IMG/VR virus record: IMGVR_UViG_3300008448_000001 | Location: 62,001 to 126,000 of that record | DNA: 64,000 bases | Direction: 5' to 3' (one strand) | Part shown: piece by piece, positions 6,787-21,129 of the stretch | How positions within the stretch are numbered: position 1 is the stretch's first letter | Layout: each line of letters opens with the position of its first letter | Position numbers and translations under genes: made by a program | The notes under the pieces: model-generated | Seen by the model: the letters and a program-made list of their open reading frames with translations, nothing else | Database searches by the model: none | Told to the model about the DNA's origin: nothing

Positions 6787-6814
6787 TTGACACTTGCCAG
6801 CTTGTGGTTATCTT
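6787..6814 (+). promoter_or_regulatory. sigma70-like promoter heading the accessory/early region
   Basis: TTGACA (6787-6792), 16 bp spacer, TATCTT (6809-6814), immediately after the terminator. Confidence 0.6.
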
Positions 6815-6851: not shown

Positions 6852-7673
6852 ATGCTTGAAGATTTATTTAAAGCGAATTGCAAGCTTGATCCGTTATCGG
6901 ATTTTGGCTTTCCCGAACGCGTTCAATGCTCTTATTCGCTTGCTCAGGTTGCAAAAGGGTGGTTTACCTTGTCTCCTTTGAAGTGTTACCCGGATAATCA
7001 ACTGGAAGACGCTCTCGACGCGATGTACCGGGAGGAGACTAAAGACGTATTCGAAGAGTTTAAGCAGCTGAAGGACATCTTTCATTTCACATTTGGTGAA
7101 CATGGTCCTTGCCTGACTGTACACGACGGTAAACTGCAGATGAAAGGTTCGGCCAGCTTGCCGATAGCAAAGCTGCTCGAGTTGCGACGAAGTGGCATGT
7201 CTGGTTTTCGTTTAATGCAAGAGTTATACCTATTACTTTTGGCGGGCGGGGTAGGCATCGCGTCGGGTCCGCAGGCCTTGCATGCAGGAGAAATTGAGTA
7301 CTCTGCTAGATTTTCAATGCCCGGTAAAACGTATACGTTAACCGTAGACGCGGCGACATTCGCATACCTCATGCGGCGGTTGTTTGGTTGGTGTGGTCAC
7401 GGTGAGTCGATGAATACAACGATAACGAGTTTTCTTCTTCGCGAAGCTGTTTCAGTGGCGAACTTGACGGTAGCAAATCAACAAGGTGTAATCGATACTT
7501 GGTGCAGAGCATACTCAGACATGAAGTTGGAAAAGGAACGGTTGCAAGATTTGCTTTCGCAGGCTAACGATGAGCTCGCTGTGCTGCGAGTAAAATTTGG
7601 CAGTAAAAAGTTAGCCACCCCGTTGACGACGATCAAAGCGAAGCGTAAAGTAACTCGCCTTCCAACTAAGTAA
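6852..7673 (+). CDS. Hypothetical protein with C-terminal coiled coil and basic tail
   Basis: 273-aa ORF with SD AAAGGA. Confidence 0.7.
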   Translation: MLEDLFKANCKLDPLSDFGFPERVQCSYSLAQVAKGWFTLSPLKCYPDNQLEDALDAMYREETKDVFEEFKQLKDIFHFTFGEHGPCLTVHDGKLQMKGSASLPIAKLLELRRSGMSGFRLMQELYLLLLAGGVGIASGPQALHAGEIEYSARFSMPGKTYTLTVDAATFAYLMRRLFGWCGHGESMNTTITSFLLREAVSVANLTVANQQGVIDTWCRAYSDMKLEKERLQDLLSQANDELAVLRVKFGSKKLATPLTTIKAKRKVTRLPTK

Positions 7674-7753
7674 CGGAAGCCCTCAAGCTTGGTAAAGTAC
7701 TAAGCGATTCAAAATCGCTTTCACGGACGAAAGCAAAGCAAGTGGGAGTGGTT

Positions 7754-8158
7754 ATGCGTAAGTTGATGTTGCTCTGTGCTTTGGTCTGCAGTTCAAATGC
7801 TTTTGCACAGTCTAGCCCGTCCGATCGCCATGTTGTTTCGAGCGGATTTGTTCTCGCTCCTGGCGAGAAGATCATCGCTGTTAACGGCGTTCCTGTAGCA
7901 CAAGAAACCGTTTGCCAAGGCAGACCTGTGGTGGCCGGAAGCGTTGCCCAGGCCAAAGCACAGCAGCAAGCTGCAGAGGGACGAATGCGGCACGTTGGAG
8001 GTGGCATGGGTGCCGGTAGCTACGAGGGCGTAGGTTTCTCGACCGTGTCAGCGGAACACGCTGTTTCTAAATGTTGCTACTGGGGGCAGCGAAAAGCTAT
8101 TGACATTGGTGTCGCTCGCGGTAGAAATGGTTGGTATGCAACAGTGATTTATCGCTAG
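7754..8158 (+). CDS. Secreted small protein, CAP/SCP-like C-terminal motif
   Basis: Signal peptide MRKLMLLCALVCSSNAFA. Motif MRHVGG…YEGVG…CCYWG…GVARGRNGWYATVIY. Confidence 0.6.
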   Translation: MRKLMLLCALVCSSNAFAQSSPSDRHVVSSGFVLAPGEKIIAVNGVPVAQETVCQGRPVVAGSVAQAKAQQQAAEGRMRHVGGGMGAGSYEGVGFSTVSAEHAVSKCCYWGQRKAIDIGVARGRNGWYATVIYR

Positions 8159-8166
8159 TTGAAACA

Positions 8167-8276
8167 AGAGCGGTCGCATGATTTGATGCAGCCAAGAGGA
8201 GGTTGAGATGTTTGCTGGTAAAACCGTTAAATCCCTAAAGCAAACTTTCACGAAGGTTTAAATCCTTCCCGCTCTT
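8167..8276 (+). ncRNA. tRNA-like element 1 (enlarged anticodon region)
   Basis: Acceptor AGAGCGG/CCGCTCT, D-stem GCAT/ATGC, T-arm GAAGG-TTTAAAT-CCTTC, 3' T-run, no CCA. Confidence 0.7.
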
Positions 8277-8280
8277 TTAT

Positions 8281-8452
8281 GGGTCGGTAGCATGTCAGGA
8301 GTCATGCACGTTTTAGCCGTTGACGCGAGGTCGGTTTGGTCGGATCCGACAGCTGAGGCGATTTAATGCGAGGCATCGCAAGCAATCACGTGGACAGTAC
8401 AACTCGCAAACGACTGGCGAGGTCCTTGGAGGTTCGAATCCTCCCCGATCCT
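8281..8452 (+). ncRNA. tRNA-like element 2 (about 120-nt insert, G3.U70 pair)
   Basis: Acceptor GGGTCGG/CCGATCC, D-stem GCATG/CATGC, canonical T-arm GGAGG-TTCGAAT-CCTCC. Confidence 0.8.
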
Positions 8453-8519
8453 TTCATGGCGAAGGCCATGGCGCGCGACACCTGCCTGATGAGTGGTGTG
8501 GATGCCAGAGCACTGGCGA

Positions 8520-8618
8520 GGATCGGCGAGCATAGCGGTAACTATGCAGACTGCTTACTTTTTTCCTTTTGGTTTCTAAGCAGTTTGTGATAAGCAGGTG
8601 AAAACCCTGCCCGATCCT
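8520..8618 (+). ncRNA. tRNA-like element 3 (long anticodon hairpin with pyrimidine-rich loop)
   Basis: GGATCGG/CCGATCC, D-stem GCATAG/CTATGC, stem GACTGCTTA/TAAGCAGTT with a 19-nt loop, T-arm GCAGG-TGAAAAC-CCTGC. Confidence 0.8.
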
Positions 8619-8736
8619 TTTTGGAAGCAAGACCCCGCGAACGACGGTGCGTGCAATTGGTCGCAGAAACCGAGAAAGCTGTAATGGCAAGTATCCGCAG
8701 AAATGCGAGTCGTGACAGCCGGAGAGACGGCAACAT

Positions 8737-8811
8737 GGATCGGTAGCTAATTTGGTCAAAGCTATGGCGCTTCAAGTGCCAAAGACGCAGGTTCGAATCC
8801 TGCCCGATCCT
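8737..8811 (+). tRNA. Normal-length tRNA-like gene with UCA anticodon (candidate opal suppressor), element 4
   Basis: 75-nt cloverleaf: GGATCGG/CCGATCC; GCT/AGC D-stem with GG in the loop; anticodon stem TGGCG/TGCCA, loop CT-TCA-AG (anticodon 8772-8774); variable AAGAC; GCAGG-TTCGAAT-CCTGC; discriminator U. Confidence 0.75.
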
Positions 8812-8908
8812 TTCCTCGATGCAGTAGCGATATACGGCGAAGCACAGGAGCGAGCAAACGATGTGAACTCACTGAAATCTCATCGGGAGGCAACAGCCTA
8901 AGTTGCGA

Positions 8909-9019
8909 GGATCGGCGGCGTGGTTACACGCTCGACGGAGGAGGAGGGAACCGGCCTTAGGCCGACCGACACGCGAAAGCTGGTAGTGCGTTCCGCAGGT
9001 GCGAACCCTGCCCGATCCT
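8909..9019 (+). ncRNA. tRNA-like element 5 (purine-rich insert)
   Basis: GGATCGG/CCGATCC, D-stem GCGTG/CACGC, T-arm GCAGG-TGCGAAC-CCTGC, 3' T-run. Confidence 0.8.
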
Positions 9020-9230
9020 TTTAAAAGCAAGTTCGGCAATCACGCCTTGAGTAAGCGTGATGTTAAGGCGGTATGCGACAACGCTCTTGGGAGTCTAACC
9101 GAACCAAAACAAGTAGTTCTTTTACGGAACGAACGGAAGCGGTGAGAAAAGACGCAACACCCTAATCAAGTGATGACGACCGACATTGGAAAGCGTGACT
9201 GCGAACCCGACAGCCGGAGTGACGGCAAAT

Positions 9231-9302
9231 GCGCTGGAAGTGACTGTGGTGGCACGCTCGGGGTTTAGCCGGGAAGCGTAGGTTCGAATCCTACCTAGAG
9301 CA
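9231..9302 (+). tRNA. Degenerate tRNA (nominal UUU anticodon, non-canonical loop), element 6
   Basis: Acceptor GCGCTGG/CTAGAGC with one mismatch, anticodon stem CTCGG/CCGGG, loop GG-TTT-AG (lacks U33), T-arm GTAGG-TTCGAAT-CCTAC. Confidence 0.55.
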
Positions 9303-9305
9303 TTA

Positions 9306-9406
9306 GAACAGGCCGCGACAAGGGGCAACTTGTCAGAAGAAACGAGCAAAACCTTTTGTGAGAGACTTCCCGGAAAACGAGTGGGTCGTAAAGCCCACCC
9401 TGTTCT
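9306..9406 (+). ncRNA. Divergent tRNA-like element 7
   Basis: Terminal stem GAACAGG/CCTGTTC stacked on hairpin GTGGG-TCGTAAAG-CCCAC. 5' hairpin GACAAG/CTTGTC. 3' T-run. Confidence 0.55.
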
Positions 9407-10541: not shown

Positions 10542-10685
10542 GGATCGGCGGCATGGCGTATCCATGACGCAGTACGGCAAAGCGTTATCTCGCAATCGGC
10601 GAAACCCTGTTAGGACACGGCGGCAGGGAGAGTCGGTGCCATCGTGAAGCGAGAATGCAGCAGGTAACCAAGCCTGCCCGATCCT
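10542..10685 (+). ncRNA. tRNA-like element 8 (isolated copy between genes)
   Basis: GGATCGG/CCGATCC, D-like hairpin CATGG/CCATG, T-arm GCAGG-TAACCAAG-CCTGC, 3' TTTT. Confidence 0.75.
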
Positions 10686-10733
10686 TTTAAGTTTGAATCC
10701 AGCAACAAGCGGCGAGGCCGAAAAGGGGTCGAA

Positions 10734-11006
10734 GTGACACACGAAGGACGCACAAGCGGTTGGGACATTCGTTTGCAATGCACAATATGCGGTTTCCGCT
10801 CGAGGTCAAATCGATACGAGGGCGATCCTCCAATGGGGCACGAGCCACCAGCAACTGTCGAGCGTGATTGCTCCAACTGCGACGCGGAAGCGAACTACCC
10901 CGAGGGCGGAGTCAAGACGGTGCATTTTGTCGATATCGCAAGCGACGCCGAGATTTCGGAAGAGCGATACAATGGATACAACCAACGGCCAAAGTGTGGT
11001 CTGTAA
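10734..11006 (+). CDS. Small zinc-ribbon protein
   Basis: CTIC…CSNC pairs. Flanked by an 18-nt direct repeat with one mismatch. Confidence 0.55.
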   Translation: MTHEGRTSGWDIRLQCTICGFRSRSNRYEGDPPMGHEPPATVERDCSNCDAEANYPEGGVKTVHFVDIASDAEISEERYNGYNQRPKCGL

Positions 11007-11032
11007 GTTTCACACAGCGGCGAGGCCGCAAA

Positions 11033-11057
11033 GCAGGTTTGAAGCCTGCCCGATACT
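11033..11057 (+). ncRNA. 3' half (T-arm plus acceptor strand) of a tRNA-like element
   Basis: GCAGG-TTTGAAG-CCTGC-CCGATAC-TTTT. No matching 5' strand found nearby. Confidence 0.5.
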
Positions 11058-11085
11058 TTTGTTTGTTTTACTTAGGAGATTGGTT

Positions 11086-11469
11086 ATGGCTATCAAAAAC
11101 ATTCCGGATGGTTGGGAGTTTGCGGGAGTTGGAAAGGTTAAGCGGGGCGAGTTTTATTTAAGCGAAGAAGGTCGTGCGCATGAGTGGACAGCAAGTGCCG
11201 AAAGCGGCTTCGTTAACTACGTCATTATCCACAAGGTCGAAAAGCCGAAGCGGTACCGCCCGTTCAAGGATACGGTAGAGTACATGCCACATCACGGCAG
11301 ACCTATTCGTAGAAGAGGCGGAAGAGGATTCGACGTCATTGTCAGTGCAGCGGATTTCACTTTGTTTGTTGCAAATGGCGACAAGATCATAGAGGTGGAC
11401 CTGCAACAGGCCTTTGATAACTGGGAATTCGTCGACGGAACCCCCTTCGGCGTTGAGGTGACGGAATGA
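11086..11469 (+). CDS. Hypothetical protein, paralog A
   Basis: SD AGGAG before ATG 11086. IPDGWE…YRPF…DGTPFGVEVTE shared with 11704..12069. Confidence 0.75.
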   Translation: MAIKNIPDGWEFAGVGKVKRGEFYLSEEGRAHEWTASAESGFVNYVIIHKVEKPKRYRPFKDTVEYMPHHGRPIRRRGGRGFDVIVSAADFTLFVANGDKIIEVDLQQAFDNWEFVDGTPFGVEVTE

Positions 11470-11703
11470 TCGACGCCAAGCAGTTGCACGAAATCCTGGC
11501 GGATTTTGATCCTACGCAAAAGCACAAAGTCTACTGAGCAAGTCAGCATTGTTCCCGATCCTTTTTGTCGCGACTCGCAAGAGGTCGACTATAGCGGCGG
11601 TAATTCAGAAGCGAACAAGGCGAAGCCTTTAAGGCAATATGGACACGGTTTCGAGTACCAGTTAACCTCGCGACTTTTTTGTTTGTTTTTACCTGGGAGA
11701 TTG

Positions 11704-12069
11704 ATGATGCAGATTGAAGGAATACCGGACGGGTGGGAGTTGGTGAGGTTTGATTACGCCACAGATGGTGAGCGGTACTTAGATGGAAGCGGGGACATTG
11801 TGCATCACCTCGGTGCAAAGCCAACGCAAGCAAAGCGGTTAATTATCCGCAAGATCGAAAAATACCGCCCGTTTGCGAATACTGCGGAAGCGGAAGTCAT
11901 GTGGGATGCAAAGCTGCAACTCAAGGAACATAGCGATGATAAGTTTAGGGTTACTGCGATTCGTGTGACTGGCGTTGTTATCGGTGCATCGTGGTATAAC
12001 TACGAGGAGGCTTTTGAAAGGTTCGAGTGCGTCGACGGAACCCCGTTTGGCGTTGAGGTGACAGAATGA
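11704..12069 (+). CDS. Hypothetical protein, paralog B
   Basis: SD GGGAG. Same N- and C-terminal motifs as paralog A. Confidence 0.75.
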   Translation: MMQIEGIPDGWELVRFDYATDGERYLDGSGDIVHHLGAKPTQAKRLIIRKIEKYRPFANTAEAEVMWDAKLQLKEHSDDKFRVTAIRVTGVVIGASWYNYEEAFERFECVDGTPFGVEVTE

Positions 12070-13293: not shown

Positions 13294-14109
13294 ATGACTG
13301 AAGACGCGAAGTACAATGAGTTGGTTTACTTGGATCTGCTCGCAAACGTTTTGAAGCGTGGGACAAGGAGAGAGGATAGGACGGGGACAGGTACGATAAG
13401 TATCTTTGGAGCACAGGCGGTTTACGACCTGTATGACTCTTTCCCGTTGCTTACGACCAAGCGTGTACCGTTTAGACACGTGGCGGAGGAGCTGTTCTGG
13501 TTTCTTAGGGGGGAGACGAATGTGAGGTCACTACAGGCCAAAGGTGTCTCAATTTGGGACGAATGGGCTGACGAGAATGGTGACCTTGGGCCGGTCTATG
13601 GCAAGCAGTGGCGAGACTTCAATGGCGTAGATCAAGTTTCTCTAATACAAAACCAGATTATTGACAATCCGAATTCCAGAAGAATTTTGCTAAGTTCTTG
13701 GAATCCGCCGGAAATTTCCGCCATGGCTTTACCGCCGTGCCACACGCTGGTGCAGTTCTACGTTTCGCCGCGGTTCAACAAACTGCATCTGGATTGCCAG
13801 TTGTATCAGCGGAGTGCCGACATGTTTTTGGGTGTGCCTTTCAACATTGCGTCCTATTCCTTGCTGACTGTTTTACTGGCGAAAACCGCTAAGCTGCTAC
13901 CGGGTCGTTTTATCCACACCCTGGGCGATGCGCACATTTACCTCAACCATGTCGAGCAAGTGGAAACGCAACTTGCTCGCGAGGTTGGCAGACCTCCGGT
14001 CCTTGGCGTCAGGACGTCACGGCCTAACGTTTGGGAGTACGTGTACAACGATCTTGTGTTGGAAAACTATCACCCACAACCGGCTATTGCCGCAAAGGTC
14101 GCGGTCTGA
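13294..14109 (+). CDS. thyA: Thymidylate synthase
   Basis: DRTGTGT, FPLLTTKRV, LGPVYGKQWR, catalytic MALPPCH, YQRSADMFLGVPFNIASY, GDAHIYLNH. Confidence 0.98.
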   Translation: MTEDAKYNELVYLDLLANVLKRGTRREDRTGTGTISIFGAQAVYDLYDSFPLLTTKRVPFRHVAEELFWFLRGETNVRSLQAKGVSIWDEWADENGDLGPVYGKQWRDFNGVDQVSLIQNQIIDNPNSRRILLSSWNPPEISAMALPPCHTLVQFYVSPRFNKLHLDCQLYQRSADMFLGVPFNIASYSLLTVLLAKTAKLLPGRFIHTLGDAHIYLNHVEQVETQLAREVGRPPVLGVRTSRPNVWEYVYNDLVLENYHPQPAIAAKVAV

Positions 14110-19737: not shown

Positions 19738-20490
19738 ATGGCGTGGTTCGAGTCGGTCCAACGATCTATTTTAAACGTGGTAGTGATCGGCAATGATTGC
19801 TCCGGGTCGGGGTTAATACAGCATGCTTTAGCACGACACCCGAAAGCCGTTTGCCATAGCAGCCTGTTTCACCCAAACAGAGCGGTACGGAGGGAAAGTC
19901 ACGAGCGTTATTTCGGTAGACCGGAAAGCGAAAACGTGATTGACTGGTATGAGCCGGCCTCCATCAGTGTTGAGCACTATTTGAACAACAAGATCTTTGA
20001 CAATGCCTTGCGGGAAGAGTCGGTGATAGGCGTGCGGGTACCGTGCGAGACGCTGCTTAGAAACGAGCTCGACGCTTACTTCAAGCAACGCTGTGACGAT
20101 GGCAAGCTTTCCATGATCCACGTCTACCGTAACCCAATCGCTTGCTTCATTGCTCGAGAGCAGCGTCGGCTTAAAACGACAAACGCTGTGTATGTAGCCC
20201 CGCAGGAAATCACCGATTACGTCCGAAAGCACAATGTTGCAACGCTTCGACTGCGAGATATCTTTTCCGATTACTTGGAGTTTAATTTTCACGAGGTTTT
20301 GCTCGATTACACCCAGGCCGTGAAACATGTCTGCCAATTTCTTGAGCTTCCCTTTACCCCGGACCTGGTTAACCGTGAGCTTATGGCGTATCATCGAAGC
20401 AATCGCTACAGCGTCATCAACTGGAAAGAGCTACTGACAAAGTGTGACGCTGAGGTTAGGGAGCAACTGGAGAACGCTGACTTTTTTTGA
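19738..20490 (+). CDS. Sulfotransferase-like protein (Stf0-like)
   Basis: VVIGNDCSGSGLIQHALARHP, IHVYRNP, VCQFLEL. Confidence 0.65.
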   Translation: MAWFESVQRSILNVVVIGNDCSGSGLIQHALARHPKAVCHSSLFHPNRAVRRESHERYFGRPESENVIDWYEPASISVEHYLNNKIFDNALREESVIGVRVPCETLLRNELDAYFKQRCDDGKLSMIHVYRNPIACFIAREQRRLKTTNAVYVAPQEITDYVRKHNVATLRLRDIFSDYLEFNFHEVLLDYTQAVKHVCQFLELPFTPDLVNRELMAYHRSNRYSVINWKELLTKCDAEVREQLENADFF

Positions 20491-20499
20491 AAGGCAATC

Positions 20500-21129
20500 A
20501 TGCTAGTCAACAACACGTGTAGCAAACCTTGGATGTACATGGAGGTGCCAAGGACGGCAAGCACGACGATCGAGAAATGTTTGCGTGCCGTTTATCCTGC
20601 CTCTTTCGCGCTGTACCAAAAGCACTGGCCCATAAGCACTCCGGAGGTCCGATTCGCCAACTGGCGGATTACCTCTGTTCGCAATCCTTTTAGCCGTGCG
20701 GTGAGCTGCTGGCAGTTCTTCACTGTGCCTGGCACGATCAGCTTTGAAGATTGGCTTTTGCAGGTCAAGAAAGAAGGTTTTATCGAGCACAACATCGAGG
20801 CCAGGCCGCAAGCTTTCTGGCTAAGTTTAAACAGCTGGGATTTGTGGATTCGGTTTGAGTTCTTAAAAACGGATTTAGAAGCGGTTTTCAAGATACTGGG
20901 GGCTGTGAACCAGACCGTAACGCAGGCTATCCCGCACCACAACGCGATCGGCGGCCCTTGGTTTAACCGCAGGGGCAAGTCTACGGTCGGTTTGCGATCT
21001 AAGCCGTGGCACGCCTTTTACAGCGAAAACACGATTCAGCTGGTTCGAGACGTTTACGCAGTAGACTTCGAGAAGCTGCAGAATTTTTATTCTGACAAAA
21101 TTGAGGATGCAATCCGCGATGATAGTTAA
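20500..21129 (+). CDS. Sulfotransferase family 2 protein
   Basis: EVPRTASTTI (PAPS loop), SVRNPFSRAVS, RPQ, IRFE, C-terminal YAVDF. Confidence 0.85.
   Translation: MLVNNTCSKPWMYMEVPRTASTTIEKCLRAVYPASFALYQKHWPISTPEVRFANWRITSVRNPFSRAVSCWQFFTVPGTISFEDWLLQVKKEGFIEHNIEARPQAFWLSLNSWDLWIRFEFLKTDLEAVFKILGAVNQTVTQAIPHHNAIGGPWFNRRGKSTVGLRSKPWHAFYSENTIQLVRDVYAVDFEKLQNFYSDKIEDAIRDDS

What the first reader, a model, noticed from the sequence alone, without database searches (positions are those of the whole stretch)
8737..8811. UCA-anticodon tRNA (candidate opal suppressor) in a genome that still uses UGA as stop
Seen: the one normal-sized GGATCGG element has loop CT-TCA-AG, a 7/5 fold and a short variable loop, so it is not tRNA-Sec. 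It has G1-C72, G2-C71 and U73. Established: U73 is a main CysRS (and bacterial GlyRS) determinant, and UCA is one base from the Cys anticodon GCA. Genes here such as thyA end in TGA at their expected C-termini. Inference: either a regulated read-through tRNA or the ancestral scaffold of the array. One in-frame target exists: the two sulfotransferase genes are separated only by TGA (20488-20490) plus three codons, though this could be chance.
Basis: partly seen in the sequence, partly recalled or inferred. Interest (0 to 1): 0.7.

Follow-up and report, generated by a model that had tools for sequence, protein, structure and literature searches.

The report
Phage tRNA with UCA anticodon
A complete 205-kb freshwater phage that reads its genes with the standard genetic code carries a well-formed tRNA gene whose anticodon matches the stop codon UGA, but the evidence suggests this anticodon is a lineage-specific variant in a family of tRNA-shaped phage RNAs, not a device for reading through stops.

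Summary
Window 8737-8811 (+) is a tRNA gene (Rfam tRNA 55.7 bits, cut-off 29) with anticodon UCA, a 7/5 fold, a 5-nt variable loop and U73. It is not tRNA-Sec.

The genome is a complete virus record with terminal repeats, 204,794 bp. The host is probably Planctomycetota. It uses the standard code: 76 of 273 crude gene calls end in TGA, thyA among them.

I found no sign of recoding or programmed read-through:
- In-frame neighbours split by one stop are not enriched for TGA.
- The sulfotransferase pair is two complete, different domains.
- No TGA junction is conserved in a 175-kb relative.
- No RF-1, TrpRS/TyrRS or CCA-adding-enzyme domain was found.

The tRNA shares its acceptor stem, T stem, 5' leader hairpin and 3' T-run with about 12 tRNA-shaped elements in this genome. 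It shares them with 49 distinct elements in other phage contigs, whose middle part ranges from nothing to about 120 nt.

Homologues with the same leader and scaffold carry UGU, a UUU-triloop hairpin or a tetraloop. The anticodon is therefore not conserved. C32-G38 can also close the loop.

Best reading (0.55): opal suppression is not the selected function, and any read-through is weak and untargeted. A selected general suppressor remains possible (0.22).

The parts
8737..8811 (+). tRNA gene with anticodon UCA (8772-8774). Acceptor 8737-8743/8804-8810, D arm 8746-8762, anticodon arm 8765-8781, variable loop 8782-8786, T arm 8787-8803, discriminator T at 8811. No CCA is encoded.
   Evidence: ARAGORN; Rfam tRNA 55.7 bits; cloverleaf is the minimum-energy fold, z = -4.1.
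8712..8732 (+). 5' leader hairpin motif GTGACA-GCCG-GAGAGA-CGGC-A, ending a few nt before the tRNA 5' end.
   Evidence: Sequence. The same motif lies 3-6 nt before two other tRNA-shaped elements of this genome and before the homologous element of relative G001. The exact 17-mer occurs in at least 119 viral contigs.
8168..8274 (+). tRNA-shaped element A. Acceptor GAGCGG/CCGCTC and T stem GAAGG/CCTTC, which are compensatory variants of the scaffold. Followed by TTTT.
   Evidence: Sequence; flagged as terminator-like at 8252-8268.
8281..8451 (+). tRNA-shaped element B (GGGTCGG...CCGATCC, T loop TTCGAAT) with a long insert.
   Evidence: 82% identical over 175 nt to a G001 element.
8520..8617 (+). 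tRNA-shaped element C. Same acceptor and T stem, 6-bp D-like hairpin, 10-bp arm with a large loop, T loop TGAAAAC.
   Evidence: four-way fold, z = -4.5. Not matched by the Rfam tRNA model at E<=5.
8909..9018 (+). tRNA-shaped element D. Same acceptor and T stem, with a ~60-nt insert.
9231..9302 (+). Weak tRNA-like element (27.7 bits, below the cut-off of 29). It has no U33 and an imperfect acceptor stem. It is preceded by a leader-motif variant at 9210-9226.
10542..10684 (+). tRNA-shaped element E with a 143-nt body. Its insert is conserved, with compensatory changes, in a distant phage contig (L272:4537-4678).
11027..11056 (+). T-arm plus 3' acceptor half (CCGATAC) followed by TTTT. No clear 5' partner was assigned.
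11540..11561 (+). 3' acceptor motif CCCGATCC followed by TTTTT, with no clear T arm or 5' partner.
6787..6814 (+). Sigma-70-like promoter match (TTGACA-16-TATCTT) upstream of genes 6852-7673 and 7742-8158 and the RNA array.
   Evidence: Consensus scan only; the number of sites is not above the shuffles.
9381..9398 (+). Terminator-like hairpin plus T-run after the first RNA array.
   Evidence: Consensus scan only.
19738..21129 (+). Two sulfotransferase genes (19738-20490 and 20500-21129) proposed as a read-through target. Rejected.
   Evidence: Sulfotransfer_3 matches to the end of its profile; Sulfotransfer_2 matches from profile position 12 at residue 12 of the second gene, which has its own ATG.
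13294..14109 (+). thyA, a conserved gene that ends in TGA at its normal C-terminus.
   Evidence: Pfam PF00303, 350 bits, profile 3-266/266; stop is TGA.

Best explanation
The gene is real and tRNA-shaped, but opal suppression is probably not what selection maintains.

It is the tRNA-sized member of a family of tRNA-shaped RNAs found in phages, probably of Planctomycetota. Family members keep an almost invariant acceptor stem (GGATCGG/CCGATCC) and T stem (GCAGG/CCTGC), a small 5' leader hairpin and a 3' T-run. The part at the anticodon-arm position is exchanged freely.

Inferred mechanism: the array is transcribed together with, or just after, two upstream genes. Each unit is then released by the host's tRNA-processing enzymes (RNase P at the 5' end, trimming and CCA addition at the 3' end). 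The acceptor/T-arm 'minihelix' and elbow are the parts under selection.

In this genome one unit has a 5-bp stem and a 7-nt loop reading UCA. If it is charged, CysRS is the best guess from U73, C35 and A36. It would then cause weak, untargeted read-through of UGA. It does not change the genetic code and has no dedicated target gene.

Shown: the structure, the family, the standard code, the lack of targets and the non-conservation of the anticodon. Inferred: processing, charging and the level of suppression.
For: - Scaffold sharing. The exact 21-nt T-arm/acceptor end occurs in 29 viral contigs, most of them not called tRNA. I found 49 distinct elements of 62-193 nt with the same ends and variable middles. 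In the alignment of the tRNA-sized members, acceptor and T arm are invariant and the middle is unalignable.
- Homologues that have the same leader motif and scaffold carry other loops. The L008/L010/L013/L016 type has UGU (58.6 bits as tRNA). The closest relative G001/G002 has a CGCGCC-UUU-GGUGCG hairpin.
- Homologues with the same scaffold but a different or no leader motif: L003/L164 have a 4-nt loop, and L034 has no arm at all.
- The exact anticodon arm was found nowhere else: 0 viral contigs, and one chance match inside a coding region in metagenomes.
- The code is standard. Code 11 ORFs cover 91.5% of the + strand. Stops are TAA 121, TGA 76, TAG 76. There is no TGA excess among in-frame pairs.
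- No conserved TGA junction or extension versus G001.
- No RF-1, CCA-adding-enzyme or Trp/TyrRS domain in the complete genome.
- C32-G38 and U33-A37 let the arm zip up to a triloop in the minimum-energy fold. A G:C pair at 32-38 occurs in only 5 of 86 ARAGORN tRNAs from the fetched loci, and two of those five are scaffold members.
- A conserved tRNA-Met(CAU) is shared by G000 and G001, but the UCA tRNA is not.
Against: - This element and the UGU type, unlike the rest of the array, keep every canonical tRNA feature: U8, A14, G18G19, U33, A37, T loop TTCGAAT and a 5-nt variable loop. A random hairpin insert would rarely do so.
- U33-A37 complementarity is normal in real tRNAs, and thermodynamic folding often over-zips anticodon loops.
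- TGA stops are depleted in the structural module: 6/55 against 55/170, Fisher p = 0.0015, while TAG is not. That is what an active late suppressor would favour. However, relative G001, in which ARAGORN finds no UCA tRNA, shows the same dip (8/47 against 33/107).
- Back-up stops within 5 codons are slightly commoner after TGA: 25/76 against 45/197, p = 0.09.
- No close relative (>90% identity) could be examined across the tRNA, so recent positive selection for UCA cannot be excluded.
Confidence: 0.55

Rival explanations
1. It is a selected, working opal suppressor tRNA with a general role. It is charged by a host synthetase and reads UGA across host and phage messages, for example to disturb host protein synthesis or to modulate late expression, without any recoding of the phage genome.
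For: - Complete canonical tRNA anatomy and a high model score.
- TGA-specific depletion of stops in the structural region, and a slight excess of nearby back-up stops after TGA.
- Suppressor-type tRNAs without identifiable targets are known in standard-code jumbo phages: XacN1, PMC5852040. One standard-code relative of recoded phages carries a TGA suppressor: bioRxiv 10.1101/2021.08.26.457843.
Against: - 28% of the phage's own genes, including thyA, end in TGA.
- The TGA dip is shared by G001, in which no UCA tRNA was found.
- The anticodon is not conserved in homologues.
- There are no accessory factors.
- A C32-G38 pair and a 2-nt linker at position 26 are unfavourable for decoding.
Confidence: 0.22
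2. This is the first reader's main reading: a regulated read-through tRNA with specific in-frame UGA targets, such as a sulfotransferase fusion, or an early step towards TGA recoding.
For: Ten + strand gene pairs are in frame and separated only by TGA, among them 19738-20490 / 20500-21129.
Against: - The rate is the same for TAG and TAA pairs.
- The sulfotransferase genes are two complete domains of different families, and the second has its own start.
- The only TGA pair with both orthologues in G001 has TAG there.
- Extensions after TGA are not preferentially conserved, and they contain stops in G001.
- TGA is not depleted genome-wide and GC is 51.7%, unlike the precursors of recoding described in 10.1101/2021.08.26.457843.
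Confidence: 0.05
3. It is a decaying or neutral copy. A former sense tRNA of the array, for example of the Arg-UCU or Thr-UGU type, has mutated in its anticodon and body and is no longer used.
For: - A13-A22 mismatch, an extra nucleotide at position 26, and C32-G38.
- It is unique to this genome.
- Its loop CUUCAAG is two changes from the CUUCUAA loop of the cellular tRNA-Arg(UCU) that has the same acceptor and T arm.
- The neighbouring element at 9231-9302 is a clearly degraded tRNA-like sequence.
Against: All four stems are intact with only one mismatch. The T loop and D loop are canonical, and the score of 55.7 bits is within the range of working tRNAs. The acceptor and T arm are identical to those of a family conserved across distant phages.
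Confidence: 0.12
4. It is a selenocysteine tRNA (ARAGORN's label).
For: Only the UCA anticodon.
Against: It has a 7/5 acceptor/T architecture, a 4-bp D stem and a 5-nt variable loop, not the 8/5 fold, long extra arm and 6-bp D stem of bacterial tRNA-Sec (sequence). The best Rfam family is the general tRNA model.
Confidence: 0.01

Closest known systems
Orphan suppressor-type tRNAs of standard-code jumbo phages (e.g. Xanthomonas phage XacN1, two CUA tRNAs; PMC5852040)
   Same: A tRNA gene whose anticodon matches a stop codon, in a large phage that uses that stop normally. In-silico read-through finds no target (here).
   Different: XacN1 carries a full set of 26 canonical tRNA genes covering all 20 amino acids. 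This phage has only tRNA-Met plus this gene. Here the tRNA shares its acceptor and T arm with a set of non-tRNA elements.
Suppressor tRNAs of alternatively coded phages (TGA to Trp, TAG to Gln; bioRxiv 10.1101/2021.08.26.457843)
   Same: A phage-encoded tRNA with anticodon UCA, and a host that uses the standard code.
   Different: Those phages have in-frame TGA in late genes, low coding density under code 11, low GC with TGA stops depleted, and sometimes RF1 or TrpRS. None of these is seen here.
tRNA-Trp(UCA) of Mycoplasma and tRNA-Gly(UCA) of code-25 bacteria (from my own knowledge)
   Same: UCA anticodon on an ordinary 7/5 tRNA body. tRNA-Gly(UCA) also has U73.
   Different: Those organisms have no UGA stops. 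This tRNA lacks G73 (Trp identity) and lacks C2-G71, G3-C70 and C36 (Gly identity).
Phage T4 opal suppressor derived from tRNA-Arg(UCU) (from my own knowledge; not checked in a paper here)
   Same: A phage tRNA that reads UGA, one base away from the Arg anticodon UCU. The scaffold here equals that of a cellular tRNA-Arg(UCU).
   Different: The T4 suppressors are laboratory mutants of a working tRNA. This is a natural allele, and it lacks A20, the main ArgRS determinant.
Bacterial tRNA-Sec (selC)
   Same: UCA anticodon.
   Different: Fold, D stem and variable arm all differ.
tRNA scaffolds that carry other RNAs: engineered tRNA scaffolds and gammaherpesvirus tRNA-miRNA chimeras (from my own knowledge)
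   Same: A tRNA-like acceptor/T-arm body used as a handle for processing and stability, with unrelated RNA attached or inserted. This is how the rest of the array looks.
   Different: No such natural system is described for phages in the papers I could search. A catalogue of viral candidate RNAs notes tRNA-like candidates that only sometimes overlap tRNA calls (PMC10690425). Function is untested here.

Membership tests
Canonical elongator tRNA (Rfam RF00005) | Covariance-model score above the curated cut-off over the whole model | tested here: met
   55.7 bits against 29, model positions 1-71 of 71.
Canonical elongator tRNA (Rfam RF00005) | Cloverleaf with 7-bp acceptor, 5-bp T stem, T loop TTCGAAT, G18G19, U8 and A14 | tested here: met
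   Read from the sequence. The minimum-energy fold is a cloverleaf, z = -4.1.
Canonical elongator tRNA (Rfam RF00005) | Open 7-nt anticodon loop: U33, purine 37, and 32-38 not a Watson-Crick pair | tested here: inconclusive
   U33 and A37 are present. C32-G38 is Watson-Crick, and the predicted fold closes the loop to a UCA triloop. G:C at 32-38 occurs in 5 of 86 reference tRNAs.
Canonical elongator tRNA (Rfam RF00005) | One nucleotide (position 26) between the D and anticodon stems | tested here: not met
   Two nucleotides (T, A), shown as an insertion in the model alignment.
Canonical elongator tRNA (Rfam RF00005) | Mature 3' CCA end and aminoacylation | not testable with these tools
   CCA is not encoded. 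The phage has no CCA-adding enzyme. RNA-library contigs do not cover the tRNA.
tRNA-Sec | 13-bp acceptor plus T helix (8/5), 6-bp D stem, long variable arm | tested here: not met
   7/5 fold, 4-bp D stem, 5-nt variable loop.
Code-change suppressor tRNA of recoded phages | In-frame TGA codons in phage genes, or low coding density under code 11 | tested here: not met
   ORFs of 100 aa or more cover 91.5% of the + strand under code 11. The longest ORF is unchanged when TGA is read as sense. No conserved TGA junctions.
Code-change suppressor tRNA of recoded phages | TGA rare as a stop, in a low-GC genome | tested here: not met
   TGA accounts for 76 of 273 stops; GC is 51.7%. There is only a regional dip in the structural module, and relative G001 shares it.
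Code-change suppressor tRNA of recoded phages | Accessory release factor or matching synthetase (present in some members) | tested here: not met
   No RF-1 domain and no Trp/TyrRS domain in the complete genome.
Orphan suppressor-type tRNA in a standard-code phage | Stop-complementary anticodon, standard code, no identifiable read-through target | tested here: met
   Precedent.
tRNA-shaped scaffold RNAs of this phage group (unnamed) | Acceptor GGATCGG/CCGATCC and T stem GCAGG/CCTGC | tested here: met
   Identical in this tRNA and in 49 distinct elements from other contigs.
tRNA-shaped scaffold RNAs of this phage group (unnamed) | Small leader hairpin a few nt upstream and a T-run after the acceptor; placement in an array | tested here: met
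   Leader at 8712-8732. TTT follows 8811. 37 of 49 family members are followed by a T-run. The array spans 8168-9302.
tmRNA tRNA-like domain | G3-U70 alanine identity pair and an internal tag reading frame | tested here: not met
   The pair is A3-U70, and the 75-nt body has no room for a tag. No tmRNA was called in the genome.

The most novel reading that the evidence does not exclude
These phages use one invariant tRNA acceptor/T-arm body as a universal handle. Different RNA 'cassettes' are swapped into the anticodon-arm position: structured cargo RNAs, plain hairpins, and now and then a true anticodon arm. The UCA unit would be the decoding-competent cassette. It would be charged through the shared acceptor (U73) and would give the phage a switchable opal suppressor. 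The other units would use the same handle for processing, stability, or as mimics against tRNA-directed host defences.
Probability: 0.15. Interest if true: 0.8.

Novelty: new member of a known kind. Interest (0 to 1): 0.45.

Why it matters
Taken alone, the gene adds one more case to a known puzzle: tRNAs that match stop codons in phages that do not recode. It is a fairly clean case, because the genome is complete, uses the standard code, has only two tRNAs and lacks helper genes. It also shows that the stop-matching anticodon can be a short-lived variant and not a conserved function.

The more useful lead is the context. The tRNA is one unit of a widespread family of tRNA-shaped phage RNAs, uncharacterised as far as I could find, with an invariant acceptor/T arm and a freely exchanged middle. 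If those units are processed and stable, they would be a natural counterpart of engineered tRNA scaffolds. They would also be a possible source of new phage tRNAs, suppressors included.

Tried and rejected
- tRNA-Sec: rejected on anatomy.
- Whole-genome recoding (TGA, TAG or TAA read as sense): code 11 already covers 91.5% of the + strand.
- Sulfotransferase fusion: rejected; these are two complete, different domains.
- Other TGA in-frame pairs and TGA extensions: no TGA excess and no conservation in G001.
- Link between TGA depletion in the structural module and the tRNA: the dip is real (p = 0.0015) but is shared by relative G001, in which ARAGORN finds no UCA tRNA. I do not count it as support.
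- 'Recurrent suppressors in the clade': ARAGORN calls a CTA ('Pyl') tRNA in G001. The Rfam alignment places the better-paired register at UCU with C33, so the call is ambiguous and I dropped the argument.
- Helper genes (RF-1, CCA-adding enzyme, Trp/TyrRS): none found.
- Search for the same tRNA elsewhere:
  - GenBank phages: no match.
  - Viral contigs: no match to the exact anticodon arm.
  - Metagenome contigs: one chance hit inside a coding region.
- Population variation at the anticodon: the assembled contigs of eight public runs break around 8745-8796, so nothing can be said.
- Expression: two RNA-library contigs match the spacers 8831-8983 and 9041-9216 exactly but do not cover the tRNA, and DNA carry-over cannot be excluded.
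- A host tRNA as the source of the scaffold: a Planctomycetaceae MAG has a related tRNA-Arg core but a different acceptor.
- A conserved neighbouring protein that might act on the RNAs: none found among 48 loci.
- Rfam families for the other array elements and for the leader motif: none at E<=5.
- Literature: I found no description of this scaffold family or of the leader motif.

Full report
**What is at the coordinates.** ARAGORN finds exactly one tRNA in the 64-kb window, at 8737-8811 on the + strand, with anticodon tca. Rfam's general tRNA model matches it end to end at 55.7 bits against a cut-off of 29, E 2.6e-9. The sequence shows:
- a 7-bp acceptor stem GGATCGG/CCGATCC;
- U8 and a D arm with G18G19;
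- a 5-bp anticodon stem and the loop C-U-UCA-A-G;
- a 5-nt variable loop and a 5-bp T stem with the canonical loop TTCGAAT;
- T as the discriminator, with no encoded CCA.

The 'SeC' label rests on the anticodon alone. The 7/5 fold, 4-bp D stem and short variable loop exclude tRNA-Sec. Three departures from a textbook tRNA are an A13-A22 mismatch, two nucleotides where position 26 normally stands, and a Watson-Crick C32-G38 combination.

**The genome.** The window is bases 62,001-126,000 of a single 204,794-bp contig. The tools identify this contig as a virus record with direct terminal repeats, estimated 100% complete. GC is 51.7% and nearly all genes lie on the + strand. Phage and nucleotide-metabolism genes are present: ribonucleotide reductase, thymidylate synthase, an SbcD-like exonuclease, a NUDIX hydrolase, an RNA-polymerase-beta-like protein and a collagen-like tail fibre. 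The whole genome holds only two ARAGORN tRNAs, this one and a tRNA-Met(CAU). The scaffold motif of the tRNA turns up in contigs binned with Pirellula, Planctomycetaceae and Phycisphaerales genomes. The phage itself is found in lake and freshwater metagenomes. The host is therefore probably a freshwater member of the Planctomycetota; this is an inference.

**Is UGA still a stop, and is anything read through?**
- Under the standard code, stop-to-stop ORFs of at least 100 codons cover 91.5% of the + strand. Reading TGA as sense does not lengthen the longest ORF.
- In a crude set of 273 + strand genes the stops are TAA 121, TGA 76 and TAG 76.
- thyA ends in TGA exactly at the end of the Pfam profile.
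- Neighbouring genes in the same frame and separated by a single stop number 10 for TGA, 9 for TAG and 18 for TAA. These are 13%, 12% and 15% of the respective stops, so there is no TGA excess.
The first matches to the last profile position. The second starts at profile position 12 with its own ATG.

I fetched a 175-kb relative, G001: 84% complete, 154 shared genes, median 68% protein identity. The one TGA junction with both orthologues present is TAG in G001. In-frame extensions beyond TGA stops are conserved no more often than those beyond TAA or TAG (4/13 against 11/44). The two best TGA cases have stops in the G001 counterpart. The genome has no RF-1 domain, no Trp/Tyr synthetase domain and no CCA-adding enzyme.

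Two weak signals point the other way. TGA stops are rarer in the structural region at 100-160 kb (6/55 against 55/170, p = 0.0015) while TAG is not. A further stop within five codons is slightly commoner after TGA (25/76 against 45/197, p = 0.09). G001, in which ARAGORN finds no UCA tRNA, shows the same regional dip (8/47 against 33/107), so I do not attribute the dip to this tRNA.

**The tRNA belongs to a scaffold family.** GGATCGG occurs 23 times in the window against 5.9 expected, and CCCGATCC 6 times against 1.5. Around the tRNA lie elements that begin with GGATCGG or a compensated variant and end with a T arm plus CCGATCC and a T-run. They are at 8168-8274, 8281-8451, 8520-8617, 8909-9018 and 10542-10684. 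There are 3' halves near 11056 and 11561. A second cluster lies at genome 172,128-172,676, next to the tRNA-Met. Only the UCA unit passes the tRNA model. The unit at 9231-9302 reaches 27.7 bits, and the others are not matched at E<=5.

The exact 21-nt T-arm/acceptor end occurs in 29 viral contigs, most of which have no tRNA call there. In all fetched loci I counted 49 distinct elements of 62-193 nt with the same ends. Of these, 37 are followed by a T-run. The base after the acceptor is T in 34 and A in 13. Some inserts are themselves conserved between distant phages with compensatory changes, for example window 10542-10684 against L272:4537-4678.

The same acceptor and T arm also occur in a cellular tRNA-Arg(UCU) from two uncultured bacteria. 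They do not occur in the related tRNA of a Planctomycetaceae genome.

**The anticodon is not conserved in homologues.**
- The motif GTGACA-GCCG-GAGAGA-CGGC-A ends a few nt before this tRNA. It also precedes two other units of this genome and one unit of G001.
- In G001/G002 the unit behind that leader is a 69-nt element. Its middle folds as a 6-bp stem with a UUU triloop; ARAGORN calls it 'Gln', and it scores 41 bits.
- In four other contigs the unit behind the leader is a 68-nt tRNA-like gene with loop G-U-UGU-A-C, scoring 58.6 bits.
- Further members with the same scaffold but not this leader have a 4-nt loop (L003, L164) or no arm at all (L034).
- In the alignment of the tRNA-sized members, acceptor and T arm are invariant and the middle cannot be aligned.
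- The exact anticodon arm of the UCA tRNA was found in no other viral contig. In metagenome contigs it occurred only once, by chance, inside a coding region.
- In a lake metagenome, a highly abundant contig matches the T arm and the spacer downstream of this tRNA, with eight differences, but has an unrelated sequence upstream of 8787.

ARAGORN also calls a 'CTA' tRNA in G001. The Rfam alignment puts the better-paired register at UCU with C33, so I do not count it as a second suppressor.

**The loop.** RNAfold's minimum-energy and centroid structures are a cloverleaf in which the anticodon arm zips through C32-G38 and U33-A37 to a UCA triloop. Such over-zipping is common in silico. However, a G:C pair at 32-38 is rare in real tRNAs: 5 of 86 ARAGORN tRNAs from the fetched loci, and two of the five are the UGU scaffold members. 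All three tRNA-sized homologue types can close in this way. That fits a hairpin under selection for pairing at least as well as an open decoding loop. It is not decisive.

**Charging (inference from established identity rules, not tested).**
- The anticodon-independent synthetases do not fit: there is no G3-U70, no long extra arm and no G-1.
- CysRS: U73, C35 and A36 match its determinants, with only G34 missing.
- TrpRS: G73 is missing.
- GlyRS: C36, C2-G71 and G3-C70 are missing.
- ArgRS: A20 is missing.

Cysteine is thus the best guess if the RNA is charged at all. Scaffold members have either T or A after the acceptor, so a single amino-acid identity is not a family-wide feature.

**Expression.** A sigma-70-like promoter match at 6787-6814 and a terminator-like site at 9381-9398 bracket two genes and the first array. 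The number of consensus matches is not above chance. Two RNA-library contigs match the spacers 8831-8983 and 9041-9216 exactly. This hints at transcription, but DNA carry-over is possible and the tRNA itself is not covered.

**Verdict.** I put 0.55 on the reading that the gene is a real tRNA-shaped unit of a modular scaffold family. Under this reading the UCA anticodon is lineage-specific and is not the selected function, and any UGA read-through is weak and untargeted. A selected general opal suppressor gets 0.22, a decaying copy 0.12, programmed read-through or incipient recoding 0.05, and tRNA-Sec 0.01.

The nearest described case is the pair of CUA tRNAs of the standard-code jumbo phage XacN1, for which no targets were found either. 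The phage differs from recoded phages and their precursors in every tested respect except the anticodon. As a suppressor-type phage tRNA it is a new member of a known kind. The scaffold family around it was not described in the papers I could search. A catalogue of viral candidate RNAs does mention tRNA-like candidates that only sometimes overlap tRNA calls.

**Limits.**
- Gene calls are a simple longest-ORF set.
- The host is inferred.
- No relative closer than about 68% median protein identity could be compared.
- No reads cover the tRNA.
- Processing, charging and decoding were not, and could not be, measured here.

Noticed in passing
window 8712-8732 and 9210-9226; genome 172,395-172,411 (L030:6396-6412); loci L037-L154: The leader motif (A)GKCGTGACA-GCCG-GAGAGA-CGGC-AC is far more widespread than this phage group. 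The exact 17-mer ACAGCCGGAGAGACGGC hits at least 119 viral contigs in a capped scan, against my own rough estimate of about 7 by chance. In the loci inspected it lies a few to a few tens of nt upstream of a ribosome-binding site and start codon, or a few nt upstream of a tRNA. Stem variants (GCCGG-GAGAGA-CCGGC, GCCG-GAAAGA-CGGC) keep the pairing. No Rfam family matches it. It could be a processing site, a boxB-like hairpin or a promoter element.
   Followed up: partly
window 8168-9302, 10542-11561; L030:6129-6677; 49 elements in other loci (e.g. L034:893-954, L003:7935-8001, L272:4537-4678): A family of tRNA-shaped RNAs has an invariant acceptor and T stem and a freely variable middle of 0 to about 120 nt. 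Some inserts are conserved across distant phages with compensatory changes. Two elbow classes seem to co-vary: D loop GGGAA with T loop TTCGAAT, against D loop G(G)TAA with T loops TGAAAAT, TAGCCAAT or TGCGATT. Units often lie 1-3 nt after a tRNA-Met-like gene. Function is unknown.
   Followed up: partly
genome 100,000-160,000 (window 38,000-98,000): TGA stops are depleted in the structural-gene region (6/55 against 55/170, p = 0.0015), TAG is unchanged and TAA is enriched. The same pattern holds in the orthologues of relative G001 (8/47 against 33/107).
   Followed up: yes
L281:1207-1278 (-), relative phage G001: A 63-bit tRNA is called 'Pyl, CTA' by ARAGORN. The Rfam alignment gives a better-paired register with loop C-C-UCU-A-A: an Arg-type anticodon with C instead of U at position 33. 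Its discriminator is also T and its acceptor starts GGA.
   Followed up: partly
window 11086-11469 and 11707-12069: Two small paralogous genes both start near ...IPDGWE... and both end ...DGTPFGVEVTE. Each lies just downstream of a CCGAT(A/C)C-TTTT scaffold 3' half. Relatives of this small protein occur near scaffold elements in six other loci.
   Followed up: no
window 7742-8158: A 138-aa protein with a signal-peptide-like N-terminus and no Pfam match sits immediately upstream of the RNA array. Its homologues (45-82% identity) also sit just upstream of tRNA or scaffold arrays in 12 other viral contigs.
   Followed up: partly
window 8787-8920, public run X4: A highly abundant lake-metagenome contig (word depth about 600) matches the T arm, acceptor and downstream spacer of this tRNA with eight differences. 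It continues upstream with an unrelated sequence. A common relative therefore carries a different cassette at this place.
   Followed up: no
L052, about 100 nt downstream of its leader motif: A stretch (GGCTGGTTAGGGCCAGC...AAGCCCTAAGCG) looks like a pistol self-cleaving ribozyme, judged from memory. It was not checked with a model.
   Followed up: no
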